Source: Macrostomum lignano
Taxonomy: Eukaryota
Assembly: GCA_002269645.1 (NCBI GenBank)
Contig: NIVC01001039.1
Coordinates: forward strand, 1-64,000
Direction: 5' to 3'
DNA length: 64,000 nt
The notes beneath the pieces were generated by a model. The model did no database searches. It saw only the letters and a list, made by a program, of their open reading frames with translations, and was not told the DNA's origin. Below are positions 16,931-55,192 of this stretch, piece by piece (position 1 is the first letter of the stretch; every line of letters begins with the position of its first letter). Both the position numbers and the translations under genes were made by a program.

Positions 16931-17718
16931 TGAAGTTATCCGTACTCCGTACAGCTAACAATGAGAGAATTTAAACTTTCTTTATTGTCTCAGACTTGGT
17001 CTAGTTTAGAAGTAAGCCAGAGGCTGATTTATTGCAGTCAGCATCACAGCATAGACCGTGCGGTGAATTGGGAATCAGCTTGTCCATAACTGGTGCCTCT
17101 TGGGTACCGAAATAGCTGCATAGAGCCAGAGATTTACCGCAAGCCTTTCGGGTCTGCAAATGCTTGCAGGCTGAGTGGCACACCTGAGATGTGCTCAAAA
17201 CTTCCTACCCAATCTCTAACAACTAACAACACAATACGGCGTCAATGTCTACAGCATGGCATCAGTTACTTTGGCCCGTGAGAAAACTTGCACCTGCGAT
17301 ACTTTAGTAATTCCTCCTTATTGTCATTCTGCTTACCCACTGAGCCGCTTTTTGGGCTTAAAATGGCAGTTGTTGTCGGGCTCAGCTAATGAGGGTATTT
17401 CAGTGAACGAGACCGGCGTTATTTTGCCATGGAAACCAACCCAACACAGCTGTACTCGTGGGTTATGATTTGCAAGCCATGCATGCATTACGACTAAATT
17501 TTGTATATTTCTGTTCATCCACTGATGCCTATGGACACAGCGCCAGCTCTTCGCTAAGGATGTTTGGGAAAAGAGGTACACTGTGTTCAAGGTTCGAGGC
17601 TCAGTTTCTGTGGCGCATTCTGGGAGATTCCGGAGCAGGTTCAAGCGTTCCTAAGAGACGCATATTGGTAAATGTAGCAGTTAAAAGTTTGTGTCTCATT
17701 GTCGGAATCGTATTGTAT

Positions 17719-18756
17719 CTACTCAAGGTCAAGGTAGAACTCGGTGTTGGCCGCTACTTCCGGGATGTCTTGACTGGCCTCGCTAAGTCGTTTACCGAAT
17801 CCGCTGCTCCAAGCTCCGGAACGTTTACCGAATCCGCTGCTCCAAGCTCCGGCACGTTTACCGAATCCGCTGCTCCAAGCTCCGGCACGTTTACCGAATC
17901 CGCTGCTCCAAGCTCCGGCACGTTTACCGAATCCGCTGCTCCAAGCTCCGGCACGTTTACCGAATCCGCTGTTCCAGGCTCCAGCACGTTTACCGAATCC
18001 GCTGTTCCAGGCTCCAGCACGTTTACCGAATCCGCTGTTCCAGGCTCCAGCACGTTTACCGAATCCGCTGTTCCAGGCTCCAGCACGTTTACCGAATCCG
18101 CTGTTCCAGGCTCCGGCACGTTTACCGAATCCGCTGCTCCAGGCTCCGGCACGTTTACCGAATCCGCTGTTCCAAGCTCCGGCACGTTTACCGAATCCGC
18201 TGCTCCAGGCTCCGGCACGTTTACCGAATCCGCTGTTCCAGGCTCCAGCACGTTTACCGAATCCGCTGTTCCAGGCTCCAGCACGTTTACCGAATCCGTT
18301 GTTCCAGGCTCCGGCACGTTTACCGAATCCGCTGTTCCAGGCTCCGGCACGTTTACCGAATCCGCTGCTCCAGGCTCCGGCACGTTTACCGAATCCGCTG
18401 TTCCAAGCTCCGGCACGTTTACCGAATCCGCTGTTCCAGGCTCCGGCACGTTTACCGAATCCGCTGCTCCAGGCTCCGGCACGTTTACCGAATCCGCTGC
18501 TCCAGGCTCCGGCCCGCTTTTTGTCTTGCCAAAGAGATGCATCACCGTTTATGTCGGCCTTATCGAGCTCATCAGTGTCCAGCAGGTCTGAAATGTGCGG
18601 ATTATATTAGTACTCAAACCATTTTTCGAGTCTGACCCCAAATTTGGTAATACGAGTAAATTAAGGAGACACGCTCTCACCCTTGGCACTGGCTGAATGA
18701 CTCAGCAAGTTGACCGCCATCAGAGCAGCCGAGAGCAGTAGCAGCAGTTTCGTCAT
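17719..18756 (-). CDS. Neuropeptide precursor: signal peptide + 22 copies of (A/S)GAW(S/N)(S/N)GF-G-KR, 314 aa
   Basis: Exon 1 (18756-18681) encodes MTKLLLLLSAALMAVNLLSHSASAK plus 1 nt, donor gtgaga. The intron is 93 nt with acceptor catttcag. Exon 2 (18587-17719) reads DLLDTDELDKADINGDASLWQDKKR-[AGAWSSGFGKR / AGAWNSGFGKR]x22-LSEASQDIPEVAANTEFYLDLE*. Total 945 nt, in frame. Most unit-to-unit differences (GCC/GCT) are synonymous in this frame. Confidence 0.93.
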
Positions 18757-18881
18757 ATCCGTCGTTGTCTCTCCGTGCTCGAAACGTTTAGCAGGATTTG
18801 CAACTGTACTGCGATGGCTTGGGTTACTCAAATGCCCAGCTGGCGTTCGCACTCCAGTGGCGAGGAGCTGCCCAAGCGCTA

Positions 18882-18892
18882 GTATTTATGCG
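18882..18892 (-). promoter_or_regulatory. TATA-like element upstream of the neuropeptide precursor
   Basis: Minus strand reads gcataaatact about 130 nt upstream of the ATG at 18756. Motif only. Confidence 0.25.
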
Positions 18893-19234
18893 CCTGGAAT
18901 GCAACGAGAAGTTTTGGGTTCTCTCTACGAGGGTATCTCATCTTTCTCATTCTGCGCCTCTTCACCGCCCTGCCCCTCTTCCCTGGCTCCCGGGATTAAC
19001 CTGATGCAGCAGTGCGGCCTCATCCGCAAAGCAGTCAGTTGATTGGCCGCGGCAGCTGCATGAGAGGTGCGTGGGCCAAAGTTGGACAAATTTGGATTCT
19101 GAAATCTACCAGGATCTGAGATGTTGAATTCGGCTATTGATAGCATTTTCGTCACTTTAATGGACCGGTATGACGTGAATGGATGCCATTTAAGTCCCCA
19201 TCCGTATCTGCGTTCCTCAGTCACTAAGTCCCTC

Positions 19235-19625
19235 TGCTCCCGAGTCCCTCCGTTTCTGAGTCCCTCCGTTCCCGAGTCCCTCCGTTTCCGAGTCCCTCCG
19301 TTTGCGAGTCTCTCCGTTCCCGAGTCCCTCCGGTCCCTCCGTTCCCGAGTCGCTCCGTTCCCGAGTCGCTCCGTTCCCGAGTCGCTCCGTTCCCGAGACC
19401 CTCCGATTCCGAGTCCCTCCGTTCCCGAGTCCCTCCGTTCCCAAGTCCCTCCGTTCCCGAGACCTCCGTTCCCGAATCGCTCCGTTCCCGAGTCCCTCCG
19501 TTCCCGAGACCCTCCGATTCCGAGTCCCTCCGTTCCCGAGACCCTCCGTTTCTGAGTCCCTCCGTTCCCGAGTCCCTCCGTTCCCGAGACCCTCCGTTTC
19601 CGAGTCCCTCCGTTCCCGAGTCCCT
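19235..19625. repeat. ~17-bp repeat (cccgagtccctccgtt)
   Basis: Seen directly. Confidence 0.88.
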
Positions 19626-20739
19626 TCATTCCCGGAATCATTCCAGTCTTGCCTCCTGTGTGACTCATAAATATGTCGATTATTTAGTCTGAACAAGTTT
19701 ACTTTCTTATAATGCATGCGCAGTGTACTAAAAGTTATTTGTGTTTCGTCCTACTGCTACCAGCAATTGCTCCTAACGTGTTGTCTAATAATTTCCTAAC
19801 CTCTTATCACCGACTGCCGAGCGGTGCCCCGCACTGTAACACACGCAGGTAAAAATTTTCTCCCCCAATACACGGCGGAAGCATATGTTCGCTCTGCCAG
19901 TGATCGGGGTTACCTGGCCCGCAATCTACTTGACGCACAGGTTCACTCAGCATCTGCTGAGCCGCCTGCCGATAGCGGGGATGAGGGTTGTTAATCAGAA
20001 TTGATCGCGAGAGTTGCCGCACTCAGCTACGAGACTTGAGCTCCGACTAAATGCATCGTAATATCGCTTGACAAACTTGTGGCTCCTCAGGTAAGTTTGG
20101 ATTGGGCTCGCAAACAAGTGGCCATTGAGATAGCGGTCTCCCGCCCAGCCTAGAAGAGGCTTGGAAAAAAGGCAATGAATGCAATTTTGAATAGCGATTT
20201 CCAATTTCCCAGAGCCCGAATTCGGAGAGCTGCTCGACTTGATAGGCGCGCTTCGCTCGATGGCTGCTGCAGGTTAATTGCAGCAACTTGAGCCGCGCTT
20301 GCTGCCAAAGAAGCGAAATATTTTTTTGCAATTCTCTTTTCTTGATTGGCAGCCAAAATGAGCTGACGAAACAAAACGCGAAATTTCCTGCAATTTTTTA
20401 TCAGTCAGCGCTGTTTAACACGTCTTGAGTCTGACAATGCGATGCTGTGTTGGCAAAGCTTGATAAGCTAGAAATGCTAGAAATGGATTTGAGCTAAAAT
20501 CGGCTTAACTGCTCAAAGTTTCAAAGTCCTTTTGAGCTAAAATTTACCGTTCCATTATGATGAGAAGTGAGACCATACAATACCGACTAATAGTCTGATT
20601 TTAAAAGCTGTTCACCTTCATTGGGACTGCAGCACCCCAGAGCCGAAGCAGGGATTGTAGGCCGACGGAAGGCTTTCAAACCAAAGTGCATCTGGTGGAA
20701 AGTACCTCGGGACTTCTGATTGTGACAGCTTGTGACAGA

Positions 20740-24090: not shown

Positions 24091-24734
24091 GCTTGTGTTT
24101 TGCTGGTGTCTGCGGGCTCTTTGTTCTCTGCTTTCTTATATTTTTCCTAGCAAAACTTGTTATTTATTTAAATACGATTTTATAGTTTAAAAAACGGCAC
24201 GCAAGCACTGTGTTACCATGGCGCCTTGTTAAACAAGCGCTCAGTTCACCTGTCTGCCATCTCGTCCATTGCTACAAACATGTACATGGGCATCGTACAA
24301 TCCCACTGAAGTTCCCCAACGGCTCGTACAGTGCGGCGTGCTGCCGCGGGCCAACCAGTGTGCAGGCAGGCAAAAAAATGCGCACAGAGGAACCGGTTCG
24401 CTCTCTGATGATGAGATGAAAGCGGCAATGAGCTCGTAGGTTTAGATAGCTGCAACGCACAAGAATAATAGATGAATGAATGCCAGCTTCTGAAACAAAC
24501 CGAATGCAGTTACTCGCAGATGTAGCTAGCGTTATTTGCTAACAATTGGAGGGCGACTCGCTTTGTTAAGAATAAAACTCTGCAATTAAAATTTAAGAAC
24601 TTGGACAAATATTTCAAGCCGGAACGTTGCCCCGCCAGAGCCCAGAGTCCAGACCAAACACCGGTTTGGGGCCTGCATTATGTACACTTAACTCATCGCC
24701 AACATTGACACTGACACCGTTCCAGACATTTAGA

Positions 24735-25678
24735 CTGTCGGAAGAGAGTGTCAACTTCCGAAACTTCGCTTCCAGACACTTGGACATGTCGGAAGAGAGT
24801 GTCAACTTCCGAAACTTCGCTTCCAGACACTTGGACATGTCGGAAGAGAGTGTCAACTTCCGAAACTTCGCTTCCAGACACTTGGACATGTCGGAAGAGA
24901 GTGTCAACTTCCGAAACTTTGCTTCCAGACACTTGGACATGTCGGAAGAGAGTGTCAACTTCCGAAACTTTGCTTCCAGACACTTGGACATGTCGGAAGA
25001 GAGTGTCAACTTCCGAAACTTCGCTTTCAGACACTTGGACATGTCGGAAGAGAGTGTCAACTTCCGAAACTTCGCTTCCAGACACTTGGACATGTCGGAA
25101 GAGAGTGTCAACTTCCGAAACTTCGCTTCCAGACACTTGGACATGTCGGAAGAGAGTGTCAACTTCCGAAACTTCGCTTCCAGACACTTGGACATGTCGG
25201 AAGAGAGTGTCAACTTCCGAAACTTCGCTTCCAGACACTTGGACATGTCGGAAGAGAGTGTCAACTTCCGAAACTTCGCTTCCAGACACTTGGACATGTC
25301 GGAAGAGAGTGTCAACTTCCGAAACTTTGCTTCCAGACACTTGGACATGTCGGAAGAGAGTGTCAACTTCCGAAACTTCGCTTCCAGACACTTGGACATG
25401 TCGGAAGAGAGTGTCAACTTCCGAAACTTCGCTTCCAGACACTTGGACATGTCGGAAGAGAGTGTCAACTTCCGAAACTTCGCTTCCAGACACTTGGACA
25501 TGTCGGAAGAGAGTGTCAACTTCCGAAACTTCGCTTCCAGACACTTGGACATGTCGGAAGAGAGTGTCAACTTCCGAAACTTTGCTTCCAGACACTTGGA
25601 CATGTCGGAAGAGAGTGTCAACTTCCGAAACTTTGCTTCCAGACACTTGGACATGTCGGAAGAGAGTGTCAACTTGCG
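24735..25678. repeat. 51-bp minisatellite, ~18 near-identical copies, internal hairpin tcggaag..cttccga
   Basis: Unit gtcggaagagagtgtcaacttccgaaacttcgcttccagacacttggacat. Confidence 0.97.
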
Positions 25679-26439
25679 AAACTATAAAATTAAGGGAAAT
25701 CGAACTCTAGCAATAGATTTTGTGAATAATCCGACGCGTAAACAAAAAAGGATCGATTGTATTTTTGTGCCAGATTAACGTTTATTTTGTAAATAGTGAA
25801 TTGCGCATTGCGTCATACTCGTACAGTAATAAATATCAGCTTATACAGGGGCATAGAAATAAGAGCTGCATTGCTCAGCAATAACTTTCAGTTTCCATTA
25901 TAAAGAGTAATATAGCTATTCGATTTTCGCATGAAGCGCTCCACAGTACAGGTAATGGCTTTCTACTAGAAAAGAAGACAAACAAAACAGCTAACAACGA
26001 TGTTTAAAAAGAGGCGTTGCAGACGAAAAAAGCAAGACAAACTCTTTGGTCTAGAAGCAGCATTTCACAATACATTTAACCAGTTAGCTCAGTTGACGCA
26101 AAAATAACAACAATTTTCTAAAGAGCTTTGTCTACATTAGCATGGCAGCGTTGGCAGATAAATACATTAAACTCCTAGCAGTTAGAGAAACGTTCTTCTG
26201 CGAATTCGATACATTTTTATGATACTCTAAACTAAATAAGCTGGCTAATAGAGAAAGCGCGCCTTTTAGCACAGCAAACGGCCGCTGCTAACCACAGTTT
26301 CGAAGGGGCAGAGTAATAAATATAGTAATAAACAAGCTAGTATTGGCTGACAGTTTATATTGGGACCTCACTATATATGGAATTGAAATTAGCGCTTAAC
26401 CCAGGGATTATTCTAATACGATGGTTTCGTTGAATACCA

Positions 26440-53749: not shown

Positions 53750-55192
53750 TCAATATTCAATAGTGAACCTTGGCGGCTTTCGTTCGGAGTCCAGCAGCGG
53801 CTCGCATGGCCGAATGGCGACCAACTCGATGTGGTCCGGCCTGATGGACTGCCGGTCCAGACGGTCCAGGCCGCCGGTCGCCGTGCGCACTGACGGAAGG
53901 CGGCTCTGTCTGCTTAGCCGCCTGTCGGCGTACACTGGATTGGTGCCACCCAGAACTGCTGGGCCGCCGGACAGGCAGCCGAGCGTCTGGCGAAGCTCCT
54001 GACGAAATCGTTGAGCGGAGGCAACGTAAAGAAAGAAATTAGCCACGTGGCTCAGGTACATAATCATCTCGGCGATGGCTTCGATCAGATAGAAGTTCGC
54101 TATGCAGGCCATGTCTCTCGATCGAGTCAAATCGAATAGGAAAATTGACAGTTTCAGCAGAGCGATGGGCAGAGTGCAGAGCAGGTAGCAGGCGCAAATT
54201 GTGCTCAGCATCACAGTCACCTGGCGGGCCGATCGGCTGCGCGGCGGCTGATTCGCCTGGTGATTGTTGCGCCAGCCGCTGAGGCAGCGCGGACGCAGCA
54301 GTCTGATCACCATGGCAGCGTTCAGCAGCAGAATAATGCCAAACGGCGTCAACAGGTAGCAGACGGTGTCCAGCCAGTAGACAGTGTAGTCAATGCCAAG
54401 CGAAGGACGCAGGTCGCAGTCGTTGTAGGCGTACTCACGAATCTCTGGGAGCAAGGAACCGTTAGAATCGTCCGCAGCAGCTCTATGCGTGTAGTTGATT
54501 AGCTTTGGCTGCAGCGCCACGGTCCACATCCAGTGCGAGTTGAGCATCAGGTCGGCGAGGCAGATGACCAACGCCGTGGCTCGAATCCTCCTACCGCTGT
54601 CGGTGCTCGTGCTGGCTCGCAACGGAAATACGACGGCATAGAAGCGCTCGATTGTCATGGCAACAATTAACCACACGGACGCGTAACTAAAGGAGAACTG
54701 CAAGTAGGAAGTGAGCTTGCAGCCAAACTCGCTGATTGTTTCTATTCGAATGCCGAACATCTCCTTGAGCCACTTCCAGAGCAGAGCGGTGGAAAGAACT
54801 AACTGGTCGGTGATGGCAATGAGGATGAGGTACAGGTACACCGGGACAGTCTTGGAGTGCCGCCGCAGCACCGCCAGGCCCAGCAGGTTTCCAACGGTGC
54901 CCACCGTCAGCAGGACTGGCGGGACGGCGCACTTCACCAGCTTGCTCAGTCTGTAGGCCCTGTAACGGTCGTACATGGCCTTCTCGTAGGGAAATATGTG
55001 CATCTCGCCGTTTTTTGCCGGGTTATAGGCGACCAAAGTGGTTGACAGAGCGGCCGAACTCTGTGTGCAGCTGGAGACGGATAGAAGTATGCTGGATTCT
55101 TGTGGGGGGAATCGAAGGCAACTCGCTATTGAGCTATTCGCCCCGATCCTCTGTGCCTCATCGCTTGGATGAAGCTCAGCAGCCAATGGCAT
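53750..55192 (-). CDS. Intronless class A (rhodopsin-like) GPCR, FMRFamide/peptide-receptor-like, 480 aa
   Basis: Seven hydrophobic segments. TM1 GTVGNLL, TM2 LILIAITDQLVL, TM3 CKL..SVWLIVAMTIERFYAVVFPL, TM5 P(F)GIILLLN, TM6 VTVML..CYLLCTLP, TM7 SHVANFFLY, helix 8 RFRQEL. Confidence 0.92.
   Translation of the reverse strand: MPLAAELHPSDEAQRIGANSSIASCLRFPPQESSILLSVSSCTQSSAALSTTLVAYNPAKNGEMHIFPYEKAMYDRYRAYRLSKLVKCAVPPVLLTVGTVGNLLGLAVLRRHSKTVPVYLYLILIAITDQLVLSTALLWKWLKEMFGIRIETISEFGCKLTSYLQFSFSYASVWLIVAMTIERFYAVVFPLRASTSTDSGRRIRATALVICLADLMLNSHWMWTVALQPKLINYTHRAAADDSNGSLLPEIREYAYNDCDLRPSLGIDYTVYWLDTVCYLLTPFGIILLLNAAMVIRLLRPRCLSGWRNNHQANQPPRSRSARQVTVMLSTICACYLLCTLPIALLKLSIFLFDLTRSRDMACIANFYLIEAIAEMIMYLSHVANFFLYVASAQRFRQELRQTLGCLSGGPAVLGGTNPVYADRRLSRQSRLPSVRTATGGLDRLDRQSIRPDHIELVAIRPCEPLLDSERKPPRFTIEY

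What the first reader, a model, noticed from the sequence alone, without database searches (positions are those of the whole stretch)
17719..18756. Hidden neuropeptide precursor encoding 22 copies of an unassigned W(S/N)(S/N)GF-amide octapeptide
Seen: the 33-bp array at 17788-18513 looks like any other minisatellite here, and the ORF track reports only two wrong frames. Read on the minus strand in the third frame, every unit is AGAWSSGF-G-KR or a variant. A 93-nt GT-AG intron joins it in frame to a 25-codon exon encoding a textbook signal peptide (MTKLLLLLSAALMAVNLLSHSASA). The layout is signal, acidic spacer, KKR, 22 peptides, acidic tail. Predicted products: AGAWNSGFamide x11, AGAWSSGFamide x9, AGAWNNGFamide x1, SGAWSSGFamide x1. 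Established: G followed by KR is the prohormone convertase / carboxypeptidase E / PAM amidation signal. Inference: the C-terminus does not fit RFamides, MIP/AstB (W-X6-Wamide), leucokinins (FxxWGamide) or AstA (YxFGLamide), and I do not recognise it among described flatworm npp/spp families, so it may be a new or highly diverged family.
Basis: partly seen in the sequence, partly recalled or inferred. Interest (0 to 1): 0.92.

Follow-up and report, generated by a model that had tools for sequence, protein, structure and literature searches.

The report
Flatworm npp-8/Wx3Yamide-type neuropeptide precursor gene
The 33-bp "minisatellite" is a real two-exon gene of the flatworm Macrostomum lignano for a secreted precursor carrying 22 amidated W-x-x-G-F octapeptides, but it belongs to a peptide family already described in planarians (npp-8) and molluscs (Wx3Yamide).

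Summary
On the minus strand, ATG 18756, a 76-nt signal-peptide exon, a 93-nt GT-AG phase-1 intron (18680-18588) and exon 2 (18587-17719) give a 314-aa protein. It holds 22 units of xGAW[S/N][S/N]GF-G-KR. The genome is Macrostomum lignano Mlig_3_7.

The array is coding, not a chance open repeat:
- The genome holds nine loci in three paralog groups: AGAWSSGF, AGQRWSSGF and QQRWSSSF.
- All nine have the same signal-exon / phase-1 intron / repeat-exon layout and a TATA-like box 133-141 nt upstream of the ATG.
- W, F, G, K and R are kept through synonymous codon changes.
- A UniProt model (A0A1I8HFI7, "Secreted protein") uses the same splice junction.

The claim of a new family is not supported. 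The closest match is planarian Smed-npp-8 (DQVWHSGYamide, GQAWYSGYamide; BLASTP E=6e-9). The best hits among 1.84 billion protein representatives are molluscan Wx3Yamide precursors. One of these includes QQGWHSGF units.

This is a Phe-amide, high-copy member of a known orphan family. Expression, processing and the receptor remain untested. I could not read McVeigh 2009 or Koziol 2016, so the M. lignano genes may already be named. The link between npp-8 and Wx3Yamide may be new.

The parts
18883..18890 (-). TATA-like box (CATAAATA), about 133 nt upstream of the ATG; putative core promoter
   Evidence: Read directly. A TATA-like element lies 133-141 nt upstream of the ATG in all nine paralogous loci. 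Function is inferred, not shown.
18681..18756 (-). Exon 1 coding part (76 nt): Met plus signal peptide MTKLLLLLSAALMAVNLLSHSASA, then K and the first base of the Asp codon
   Evidence: The same exon and junction are used by UniProt model A0A1I8HFI7. There are no differences from the C1056 and C3614 copies.
18588..18680 (-). 93-nt intron, GTGAGA...TTTCAG, phase 1
   Evidence: A phase-1 intron directly after the signal peptide is also present in the B paralogs (76-79 nt) and C paralogs (140-159 nt).
18514..18587 (-). Acidic spacer DLLDTDELDKADINGDASLWQD, ending in the KKR cleavage site
   Evidence: The spacer is not conserved between paralog groups, whereas the peptides are. This is typical of propeptide spacers.
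17788..18513 (-). 22 tandem 33-nt units, each encoding an octapeptide [A/S]GAW[S/N][S/N]GF, a Gly amidation donor and a Lys-Arg cleavage site
   Evidence: Variable sites within the array are three synonymous third positions and three replacements: S/N twice and A/S once. Across paralogs, W, F, G, K and R are kept through synonymous codon changes.
17719..17787 (-). Acidic C-terminal tail LSEASQDIPEVAANTEFYLDLE and stop codon TAG (17721-17719)

Best explanation
This is a protein-coding gene of Macrostomum lignano for a multi-copy peptide prohormone of the flatworm npp-8 / molluscan Wx3Yamide kind.

Inferred pathway, by established prohormone biochemistry:
1. The 24-residue signal peptide takes the 314-aa precursor into the ER and is cut after A-S-A.
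2. A PC2-type convertase cuts after each KR (and after KKR).
3. A carboxypeptidase E-type enzyme removes the basic residues.
4. Peptidylglycine alpha-amidating monooxygenase converts the exposed Gly into a C-terminal amide.

This releases 22 octapeptides per precursor: AGAWNSGFamide x11, AGAWSSGFamide x9, AGAWNNGFamide x1 and SGAWSSGFamide x1. They most likely act as neuronal or enteroendocrine signals on a still unknown receptor, probably a GPCR.

The array is mechanically also a minisatellite. Copy number differs between gene copies, and variant units sit in blocks. This indicates unequal crossing-over under selection for the peptide.

Shown: sequence, gene structure, paralogs, codon-level constraint and similarity to npp-8 and Wx3Yamide. 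Inferred: transcription, processing, amidation, cell type and receptor.
For: Organism. UniRef hits name Macrostomum lignano. G000 has 764,410,778 bases in 5269 contigs, against 764,424,962 bases in 5270 scaffolds for Mlig_3_7 (PMC5730564).

Gene structure. The coordinates and splice are verified. UniProt model A0A1I8HFI7 reads ...SASAK|DLLDTDE...KKRAGAWNSGFGKR, the same junction.

Paralogs. There are nine loci in three groups:
- A: C1039, C1056, C3614; 19-22 copies.
- B: C1733, C4190, C2877; (AG/PD/DG)QRWS[S/N/A]GF; 11-23 amidated copies.
- C: C1965, C4389, C2913; Q(Q/PQ/RQ)[R/V/M]WSSSF; 6 copies, N-terminal Gln.
All have a signal-peptide exon ending in a phase-1 G|GT donor, a short intron, an acidic spacer, a dibasic site, the repeats and an acidic tail.

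Protein-level constraint. There are 21 distinct DNA versions of the 24-nt core W-x-x-x-F-G-K-R.
- Trp is invariant.
- Phe uses TTC/TTT, Lys AAA/AAG and Arg CGT/CGA/CGC/AGG.
- Gly uses GGT/GGC/GGA, with one G-to-V exception.
- Ser2 is AGC in group A but TCC/TCG in groups B and C.
- 12 of 20 differences between group consensus cores fall at third positions.
- The other frames are not conserved.

Gene copies. The C1056 copy differs from the window at 33 alignment columns, none inside the 1038-bp gene. The C3614 copy has none in exon 1 or the spacer.

Control. None of about 25 other repeat loci fetched from the weaker hits has a G-dibasic grammar, apart from one unrelated precursor on C225.

Processing machinery. 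The genome carries proprotein-convertase P domains (37 hits) and copper type II monooxygenase domains (46 hits).

Family.
- Smed-npp-8 peptides are ...DQVWHSGYa...GQAWYSGYa and ...DQAWYSGYa.
- BLASTP of Smed-npp-8 against group B gives E=6e-9, aligned unit to unit.
- C-terminally anchored 8-mers give mean BLOSUM62 scores of 19-27 against npp-8, 8-18 against molluscan Wx3Yamide and -4 to 5 against kinin, AstA and others.
- The best phmmer hits are Wx3Yamide-type precursors of Dreissena, Haliotis, Mya, Batillaria and Potamilus.
- The gastropod-type precursor P0068 carries QQGWHSGF, QQGWYGHF and QQGWHSHF units.
- Smed-npp-8 is expressed in the lateral cephalic ganglia and the intestine.
Against: No RNA-seq, EST, in situ or peptidomic data for M. 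lignano could be reached here. Transcription, the splice and amidation rest on sequence logic and on a database gene model whose evidence basis I could not inspect.

No canonical AATAAA is visible within about 400 nt downstream of the stop.

The signal peptide was not scored with SignalP.

Homology with npp-8 and Wx3Yamide rests on an 8-residue motif plus precursor grammar. Spacers and signal peptides are not alignable across phyla. HMMER E-values for repeats of this kind are inflated by the shared G-K-R periodicity: kinin precursors scored E=8e-49.

A search of G000 with Smed-npp-8 did not return these loci. Its first look passed only 4 candidates, so this is a weak negative.

The group A peptide, the one in the window, is the most derived. 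It lacks the Gln at position -7 that groups B and C, npp-8 and the gastropod peptides share.
Confidence: 0.8

Rival explanations
1. Real multi-copy amidated peptide precursor, but evolutionarily independent of npp-8 and Wx3Yamide. Under this reading the W-x3-aromatic-amide motif arose by convergence, and the reader's 'new family' would then stand.
For: Only about 8 residues per unit can be compared. Spacers and signal peptides do not align between phyla (one search shows this already between paralogs). Unrelated kinin and AstA precursors also score very well in phmmer, so E-values do not prove homology. One search did not link Smed-npp-8 to these loci.
Against: Groups B and C share 4-5 of 8 identical positions plus the F/Y position with Smed-npp-8: Q at -7, W at -5, S at -3, G at -2 and an aromatic amide at -1. 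The mean anchored BLOSUM score is 19-27, against about 0 for the other amidated families. The molluscan family itself contains F-amide units almost identical to the flatworm ones: QQGWHSGF against QQRWSSSF and GQRWSSGF. The peptide length is the same (8-9 residues). The QQ N-terminus of group C matches the gastropod and scallop peptides.
Confidence: 0.17
2. Secreted amidated peptides that are not neuronal signals. They could be products of exocrine or gland cells (adhesive, pharyngeal or prostate glands), or pheromone, antimicrobial or toxin-like peptides made from a polyprotein.
For: Nothing in the sequence specifies the cell type. Planarian prohormone genes are also expressed outside the CNS: npp-8 in the intestine and mpl-2 in adhesive glands. 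Very high copy numbers (up to 23 amidated units) suit bulk secretion.
Against: The grammar of short peptide, Gly amide donor and KR on both sides is the classical neuroendocrine one. The closest relative is expressed in brain neurons. Oyster and scallop Wx3Yamide precursors were found in ganglia transcriptomes. The peptides are too short and uncharged (group A) for typical antimicrobial peptides.
Confidence: 0.12
3. Non-coding minisatellite that happens to be open in this frame next to a chance signal-peptide-like ORF.
For: The window is packed with minisatellites. Five of the six frames of this array are open. Arrays with a period divisible by 3 and many open frames occur nearby.
Against: Three divergent paralog groups keep the same reading frame, motif, processing sites, signal-peptide exon and intron phase, with synonymous-biased divergence. 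Indels within the array are all multiples of 33. An independent gene model exists. There is a cross-phylum motif match.
Confidence: 0.01

Closest known systems
Flatworm neuropeptide precursor-8 (Smed-npp-8, GenBank GU295189; Collins et al. 2010, PMC2953531; flagged there as previously predicted from the genome, presumably by McVeigh et al. 2009)
   Same: It is from the same phylum. It is an amidated multi-copy precursor with signal peptide, spacer and peptides each ending in G-K-R. The peptide C-termini are Q-[A/V]-W-[H/Y]-S-G-Y-NH2, against G-Q-R-W-S-S-G-F-NH2 (group B), A-G-A-W-S-S-G-F-NH2 (group A, this window) and Q-Q-R-W-S-S-S-F-NH2 (group C). Trp at -5, Ser at -3, Gly at -2 and an aromatic amide at -1 are shared. 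Pairwise BLASTP gives E=6e-9.
   Different: Smed-npp-8 has Tyr-amide, not Phe-amide. It has only 3 copies, with long and variable N-terminal extensions (13-15-residue peptides), against 6-23 tightly packed 8-9-residue peptides here. There is a single gene in the planarian list against three paralog groups, each in three copies, here. Group A has lost the Gln at -7.
Molluscan Wx3Yamide precursors (named by Stewart et al. 2014 in oysters, PMC4200219; scallop SNKWSIAYa, LRQGWNIAYa and QQGWHIAYa, PMC5996578; function unknown, PMC8398477)
   Same: They are multi-copy precursors of about 8-residue peptides flanked by KR, with Trp at -5 and an aromatic amide at -1. They were the best hits of the window's protein among 1.84 billion representatives (E down to 3e-60). 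Gastropod-type units QQGWHSGF, QQGWYGHF and QQGWHSHF show Y/F interchange inside the family and differ from flatworm units at only 2-3 positions. The QQ N-terminus is shared with group C. One genomic copy (L035) has an acceptor site consistent with a phase-1 intron at the end of the signal peptide (weak evidence).
   Different: They are from a different phylum and mostly carry Tyr-amide. Positions -4 to -2 are variable (G-A-T, H-S-D, E-T-A). The molluscan precursors are longer (265-480 aa). They have an isolated first copy, LPGW(S/T)VYYamide in bivalves, followed by a long acidic spacer, and in gastropods spacers between copies. The literature treats the family as molluscan. I found no paper linking it to flatworm npp-8.
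Kinins (F-x-x-W-G-amide) and allatostatin-A (Y-x-F-G-L-amide) multi-copy precursors
   Same: They show the same precursor grammar: many short amidated peptides separated by G-K-R. They also have similar residue composition (A, F, N, S, W, G), which makes them strong phmmer hits. An example is Lycorma delicatula XP_075222263 with AFNSWG-GKR x27, E=8e-49.
   Different: The residue order differs. In kinins Trp is at -2 and Gly-amide is at -1. AstA ends in F-G-L-amide. The anchored similarity to the M. lignano peptides is about 0. These are analogues in architecture, not relatives.

Membership tests
Amidated multi-copy neuropeptide/prohormone precursor (generic class) | N-terminal signal peptide | tested here: inconclusive
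   MTKLLLLLSAALMAVNLLSHSASA has n-, h- and c-regions and A-x-A at -3/-1. The UniProt fragment is auto-named 'Secreted protein'. No SignalP run was possible.
Amidated multi-copy neuropeptide/prohormone precursor (generic class) | Repeated short peptides each flanked by dibasic cleavage sites, with a C-terminal Gly as amide donor | tested here: met
   All 22 of 22 units are x8-G-K-R, preceded by KKR. The same holds in paralog groups B and C.
Amidated multi-copy neuropeptide/prohormone precursor (generic class) | Conservation confined to peptides and processing sites; spacers free to vary | tested here: met
   Alignment A1 shows W, S, F, G, K and R invariant in every unit, while signal peptides and spacers are barely alignable. 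The codon analysis agrees.
Amidated multi-copy neuropeptide/prohormone precursor (generic class) | Processing enzymes present in the organism (PC2-type convertase, amidating monooxygenase) | tested here: met
   PF01483 gave 37 hits and PF01082 gave 46 hits over the cut-off in G000. These are domain-level hits. Orthology to PC2 and PHM was not resolved.
Amidated multi-copy neuropeptide/prohormone precursor (generic class) | Expression in neurons or endocrine cells and detection of the mature amidated peptides | not testable with these tools
   No M. lignano expression or peptidomic data were reachable.
Flatworm npp-8 | Peptide C-terminus Q-x-W-x-S-G-Y-amide | tested here: inconclusive
   Group B matches Q, W, S and G, with F in place of Y. 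Group A (this window) matches W, S and G only, also with F in place of Y. Group C matches Q, W and S, with S in place of G and F in place of Y. The motif is met as W-x-S-[G/S]-[Y/F]-amide, not as the strict Tyr-amide.
Flatworm npp-8 | Orthology (reciprocal best match, synteny or phylogeny) | tested here: inconclusive
   Among the Smed prohormones listed in the Collins 2010 supplement, only npp-8 carries a GYGKR string, and no entry carries GFGKR or SFGKR. BLASTP gives E=6e-9. The reverse search in G000 found nothing, with only 4 candidates scored. No synteny or tree is possible for peptides this short.
Molluscan Wx3Yamide | Multiple copies of W-x-x-x-Y-amide peptides between dibasic sites | tested here: inconclusive
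   W-x3 spacing, peptide length and amidation are met. The terminal residue is Phe in all M. lignano units. The molluscan precursors P0068 and P0026 contain F-amide units too. Membership therefore depends on reading the family as Wx3[Y/F]amide.
Molluscan Wx3Yamide | Common receptor or function | not testable with these tools
   No receptor or function is known for the family (PMC8398477).
Kinin (leucokinin/lymnokinin) | C-terminal F-x-x-W-G/S/A-amide | tested here: not met
   Trp is at -5 and Phe-amide at -1. The anchored BLOSUM score is -4 to 0.6.
Allatostatin-A / buccalin | C-terminal Y/F-x-F-G-L/I-amide | tested here: not met
   There is no F-G-L terminus. The anchored BLOSUM score is 0.4-4.9.

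The most novel reading that the evidence does not exclude
Flatworm npp-8, the three M. lignano W-x3-F-amide genes and molluscan Wx3Yamide would form one ancient spiralian neuropeptide family, (Q)-x-W-x-x-x-[Y/F]-amide. The accessible literature still treats them as a 'miscellaneous' planarian peptide and a mollusc-only novelty. M. lignano would have expanded the family to three paralog groups, two of them absent from public protein sets. That would give an orphan family a tractable, transgenic flatworm model for receptor deorphanisation.
Probability: 0.45. Interest if true: 0.45.

Novelty: new member of a known kind. Interest (0 to 1): 0.3.

Why it matters
For genome annotation, this is a clear case of a real peptide-hormone gene disguised as one of hundreds of minisatellites. 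In public protein sets it appears only as truncated or frameshifted fragments. Its two paralog groups (B and C) did not appear in a 5.8-billion-cluster collection.

For neuropeptide evolution, the M. lignano peptides bridge planarian npp-8 and molluscan Wx3Yamide through shared Q-x-W-x-S-G-[Y/F]-amide units. This suggests the orphan family is spiralian-wide rather than mollusc-specific.

M. lignano is transgenic and RNAi-amenable, so the family's function and receptor become testable. It is not a new kind of signalling molecule.

Tried and rejected
Protein searches.
- The search for homologous proteins with the full 314-aa protein found nothing, probably because of the length window and word limits.
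- A 94-aa N-terminal query found the three UniProt fragments.
- A profile of A, B and C added nothing, so B and C are absent from that collection.

Literature searches that found no neuropeptide paper:
- The strings AWSSGF, WSSGF, WNSGF and WSSSF.
- The names GFamide and SFamide.
- Ml-npp names.
- npp-8 as a word, which returned only Collins 2010 plus C. elegans nucleoporin papers.
- WYSGY and WHSGY.

Papers not held, so whether the M. lignano genes already carry an npp number could not be checked:
- McVeigh 2009 (PMC2749192).
- McVeigh 2011 and McVeigh 2012.
- Koziol 2016 was known to me only from a reference list, and I did not try to retrieve it.

Other checks.
- The xenacoelomorph precursor supplement (Thiel 2018) has no W..GFGKR peptide.
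- Searching G000 with Smed-npp-8 gave no significant hit, but the first look was insensitive.
- Pfam has no family for these proteins.
- The weaker repeat hits were fetched and translated. They are non-coding minisatellites, except for one unrelated precursor on C225.

Resemblances considered from memory and set aside as chance matches of short motifs: GnRH (pQHWSYGL...), kisspeptin-10 (YNWNSFGLRFa), CCK (WMDFa), NdWFamide and the pedal peptide/orcokinin '...SGFG' motif. Their precursor architectures and motif registers differ.

The 5' extension in A0A1I8FAM5 could not be reconciled with a GT-AG intron in this assembly. I treated it as an unreliable model.
Full report
**1.

Reading 17600-18900 on the minus strand and splicing it by script gives the following:
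- ATG at 18756.
- A 76-nt coding exon for MTKLLLLLSAALMAVNLLSHSASAK.
- Donor AAGG|GTGAGA.
- A 93-nt intron (18680-18588) ending TTTCAG, in phase 1.
- A second exon, 18587-17719, ending in TAG.

The 945-nt CDS encodes 314 aa. The layout is signal peptide, acidic spacer (DLLDTDELDKADINGDASLWQD), KKR, 22 units of eight residues plus G-K-R, and an acidic tail. Tandem Repeats Finder gives 17789-18513, period 33, 22.0 copies, 97% matches and no indels.

**2. Why an open frame is not enough here, and what shows the array is coding**

Five of the six frames of the array are open. The window carries more than twenty other minisatellites. One is a 51-bp array that is open in five frames yet has no peptide grammar. 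The decisive evidence comes from the rest of the genome.

A six-frame search of the window's assembly with the protein, followed by retrieval of the loci, shows nine loci in three groups of three.

| Group | Contigs | Units | Signal peptide |
|---|---|---|---|
| A | C1039 (this window), C1056, C3614 | 19-22 units [A/S]G[A/T]W[S/N][S/N]GF | MTKLLLLLSAALMAVNLLSHSASA |
| B | C1733, C4190, C2877 | 11-23 amidated units (AG/PD/DG)QRWS[S/N/A]GF | MQYIWRLVCLAVIFAVVVSAQTN |
| C | C1965, C4389, C2913 | six units QQRWSSSF, QPQVWSSSF, QRQMWSSSF, RQRWSSSF | M(R/H)LLQLAALVGSLISASVIVASE |

Every locus shares these features:
- A 70-76-nt signal-peptide exon ending in a phase-1 G|GT donor.
- A short intron of 76-159 nt.
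- An acidic spacer ending in a dibasic site.
- The repeats, and an acidic tail.
- A TATA-like element 133-141 nt upstream of the ATG.

Signal peptides and spacers hardly align between groups. Every unit nevertheless keeps W, F, G, K and R.

At the DNA level there are 21 distinct versions of the 24-nt core:
- Trp never changes.
- Phe uses TTC/TTT, Lys AAA/AAG and Arg CGT/CGA/CGC/AGG.
- Gly uses GGT/GGC/GGA, apart from one terminal unit on C2877 where it is Val.
- The first Ser is AGC in group A but TCC/TCG in groups B and C.
- 12 of the 20 differences between group consensus cores are at third positions.
- The two other frames on this strand are not conserved.

The C1056 copy differs from the window at 33 alignment columns over 3.2 kb. 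None of them lies in the 1038-bp gene. The C3614 copy has no change in exon 1 or the spacer, while its flanks are about 5-10% different.

About 25 of the weaker repeat matches were fetched and translated. None had a G-dibasic grammar, apart from one unrelated precursor on C225.

**3. Organism and existing annotation**

A 94-aa N-terminal query found three UniRef entries, all from Macrostomum lignano:
- A0A1I8HFI7, 'Secreted protein', 68 aa. It reads MTKLL...SASAK|DLLDTDE...KKRAGAWNSGFGKRAGAWNSG, the very splice predicted here, and is then truncated.
- A0A1I8FAM5, 76 aa, mis-named 'RxLR effector protein', with a doubtful 5' extension.
- A0A1I8JQD3, a frameshifted model.

The assembly size matches Mlig_3_7: 764,410,778 bases in 5269 contigs here, against 764,424,962 bases in 5270 scaffolds in Wudarski et al. 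2017. Three copies per gene fit that genome's known duplication.

The gene is therefore not wholly hidden. It is represented only by fragments, none of them annotated as a neuropeptide. Groups B and C did not turn up in the protein collection at all.

**4. What family it is**

A full HMMER scan of the exon-2 protein against 1.84 billion representatives returned 354 hits. Inspection shows they are other multi-copy amidated precursors.

At the top are proteins whose units are W-x-x-x-Y-G-K-R:
- APAWQAVY (E=3e-60).
- APGWGATY (Dreissena polymorpha KAH3891038).
- QQGWHSDY (Haliotis rubra XP_046558594 and H. asinina).
- QQGWETAY (Batillaria attramentaria KAK7481855).
- Mya arenaria XP_052801122.
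- Potamilus streckersoni KAK3594052, with SWMSGY and AWLTTF.

All named members are molluscs, annotated as uncharacterised.

This is the Wx3Yamide family named in oysters by Stewart et al. 2014. It was also found in scallop as SNKWSIAYa, LRQGWNIAYa and QQGWHIAYa. In 2021 it was still described as a molluscan peptide of unknown function.

One member, P0068 (Logan run SRR32833658), aligns end to end with the Batillaria protein at E=4e-69. It contains the units QQGWHSGF, QQGWYGHF and QQGWHSHF. Phe-amide therefore occurs within the molluscan family, and these units are two or three residues away from the flatworm units QQRWSSSF and GQRWSSGF.

Kinin (AFNSWG) and allatostatin-A (YxFGL) precursors also score highly. 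That is composition and G-K-R periodicity, because the residue order does not match.

The supplement of Collins et al. 2010 lists the planarian prohormones. I searched it for six C-terminal strings: GFGKR, SFGKR, TYGKR, GYGKR, VYGKR and AYGKR. Only GYGKR occurred, and only in Smed-npp-8. Its predicted peptides are ...DQVWHSGYamide...GQAWYSGYamide and ...DQAWYSGYamide. The paper files it under 'miscellaneous amidated peptides' and flags it as previously predicted from the genome. It is expressed in the lateral cephalic ganglia and in the intestine.

BLASTP of Smed-npp-8 against the group B protein gives E=6e-9, aligning unit to unit.

I also took the last eight residues before each G-dibasic site and scored them against the M. 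lignano peptides:

| Compared with | Mean BLOSUM62 score over 8 residues |
|---|---|
| Smed-npp-8 | 19-27 (up to 5/8 identical, plus F/Y) |
| Gastropod-type Wx3Yamide | 10-18 |
| Bivalve-type Wx3Yamide | 8-11 |
| Kinin, AstA and two other amidated families | -4 to 5 |

The common core is (Q)-x-W-x-S-[G/S]-[Y/F]-amide. Group A, the gene in the window, is the most derived. It has G-A where the others have Q-R, Q-A or Q-G.

**5. Mechanism**

These steps are established prohormone biochemistry and are inferred here:
1. The signal peptide is cleaved after A-S-A.
2. A PC2-type convertase cuts at KR.
3. A carboxypeptidase trims the basic residues.
4. Amidation uses the Gly as donor.

The result is 22 amidated octapeptides per molecule. 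Group C peptides start with Gln and could cyclise to pyroglutamate. The genome carries proprotein-convertase P domains and copper type II monooxygenase domains.

The array also behaves as a minisatellite. Copy number differs between the gene copies: 22, 22 and 19 in group A, and 15, 23 and 11 amidated units in group B. Variant units lie in blocks, and all length changes are multiples of the unit. This fits unequal crossing-over filtered by selection on the peptide.

Cell type and receptor are unknown. By analogy with Smed-npp-8 and the ganglionic molluscan transcripts, a neuronal or enteroendocrine signal acting on a GPCR is the most likely reading.

**6. What remains open**

- No M. lignano expression or peptidomic data could be reached.
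- SignalP could not be run.
- No canonical AATAAA is seen within about 400 nt after the stop.
- Homology across phyla rests on a short motif plus architecture.
- The reverse search of the genome with Smed-npp-8 was negative, but it scored only four candidates.
- McVeigh et al. 2009 (which named the npp genes and used M. lignano ESTs, from memory) and the 2011 and 2012 McVeigh papers are not held.
- Koziol et al. 2016 was known to me only from a reference list, and I did not try to retrieve it.
- I therefore cannot exclude that the M. lignano genes already carry an npp number.
- I found no open paper that links npp-8 with Wx3Yamide.

**7. Verdict**

The novelty claim fails. This is a Phe-amide, high-copy member of a known orphan family: flatworm npp-8 and molluscan Wx3Yamide.

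The modestly new points are these:
- Full-length models for nine loci.
- Two paralog groups that were not found in the public protein collection searched.
- The bridge these peptides provide between the planarian and molluscan families.

Noticed in passing
G000:C225:251391-252008 (+) (locus L027): Another unrelated multi-copy amidated precursor. It reads MQILALSVATLAIAAAVAAAATA..., followed by about 13 units of (E/D)WQRGSRL-G-KR, which predicts (E/D)WQRGSRLamide. It contains no introns in the part seen. The family was not identified.
   Followed up: partly
G000:C2877 about 54,430-54,470 (-) (locus L015): The last unit of this group B copy reads AGQRWSSGF-V-KR (GGT to GTC). The amidation donor Gly is lost in one terminal repeat. 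This is a decaying edge copy, as often seen at the ends of repeat arrays.
   Followed up: no
window 19227-19634: A 16-nt minisatellite (about 26 copies) lies about 340 nt upstream of the TATA-like box of the gene. 29 of the 33 differences between the C1039 and C1056 copies lie in the 5' flank that contains this array.
   Followed up: partly
window 24720-25683: A 51-bp array with 18.9 copies and 98% identity is open in five of six frames. One frame reads ...VSTSETSLPDTWTCRKR..., with RKR sites but no Gly donor and no signal peptide. I took it as a non-coding minisatellite, and it served as a negative control.
   Followed up: partly
UniProt A0A1I8FAM5 and A0A1I8JQD3 (proteins P0003, P0002): These are two public models of this same gene. 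One is auto-named 'RxLR effector protein' and carries a 5' extension that I could not fit to a GT-AG intron here. The other slips into the wrong frames of the repeat (SVNVPEPGTAD...). Both names and models are unreliable.
   Followed up: partly
G000:C861:376,000-426,000; C757:32,000-66,000; C4862:6,000-32,000: Copper type II monooxygenase (PF01082) domains occur as dense tandem clusters, with at least six hits within 50 kb on C861. There are 46 hits genome-wide. This suggests an expanded PHM/DBH-like gene family.
   Followed up: no
locus L035 about 985-1003 (ENA ERZ26273219, contig ctg29300): The genomic copy of the best Wx3Yamide-type hit (P0004) begins at a polypyrimidine tract plus CAG acceptor. 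The frame implies a phase-1 intron at the end of the signal peptide, the same position and phase as in the M. lignano genes. The upstream exon was not in the fetched DNA.
   Followed up: partly
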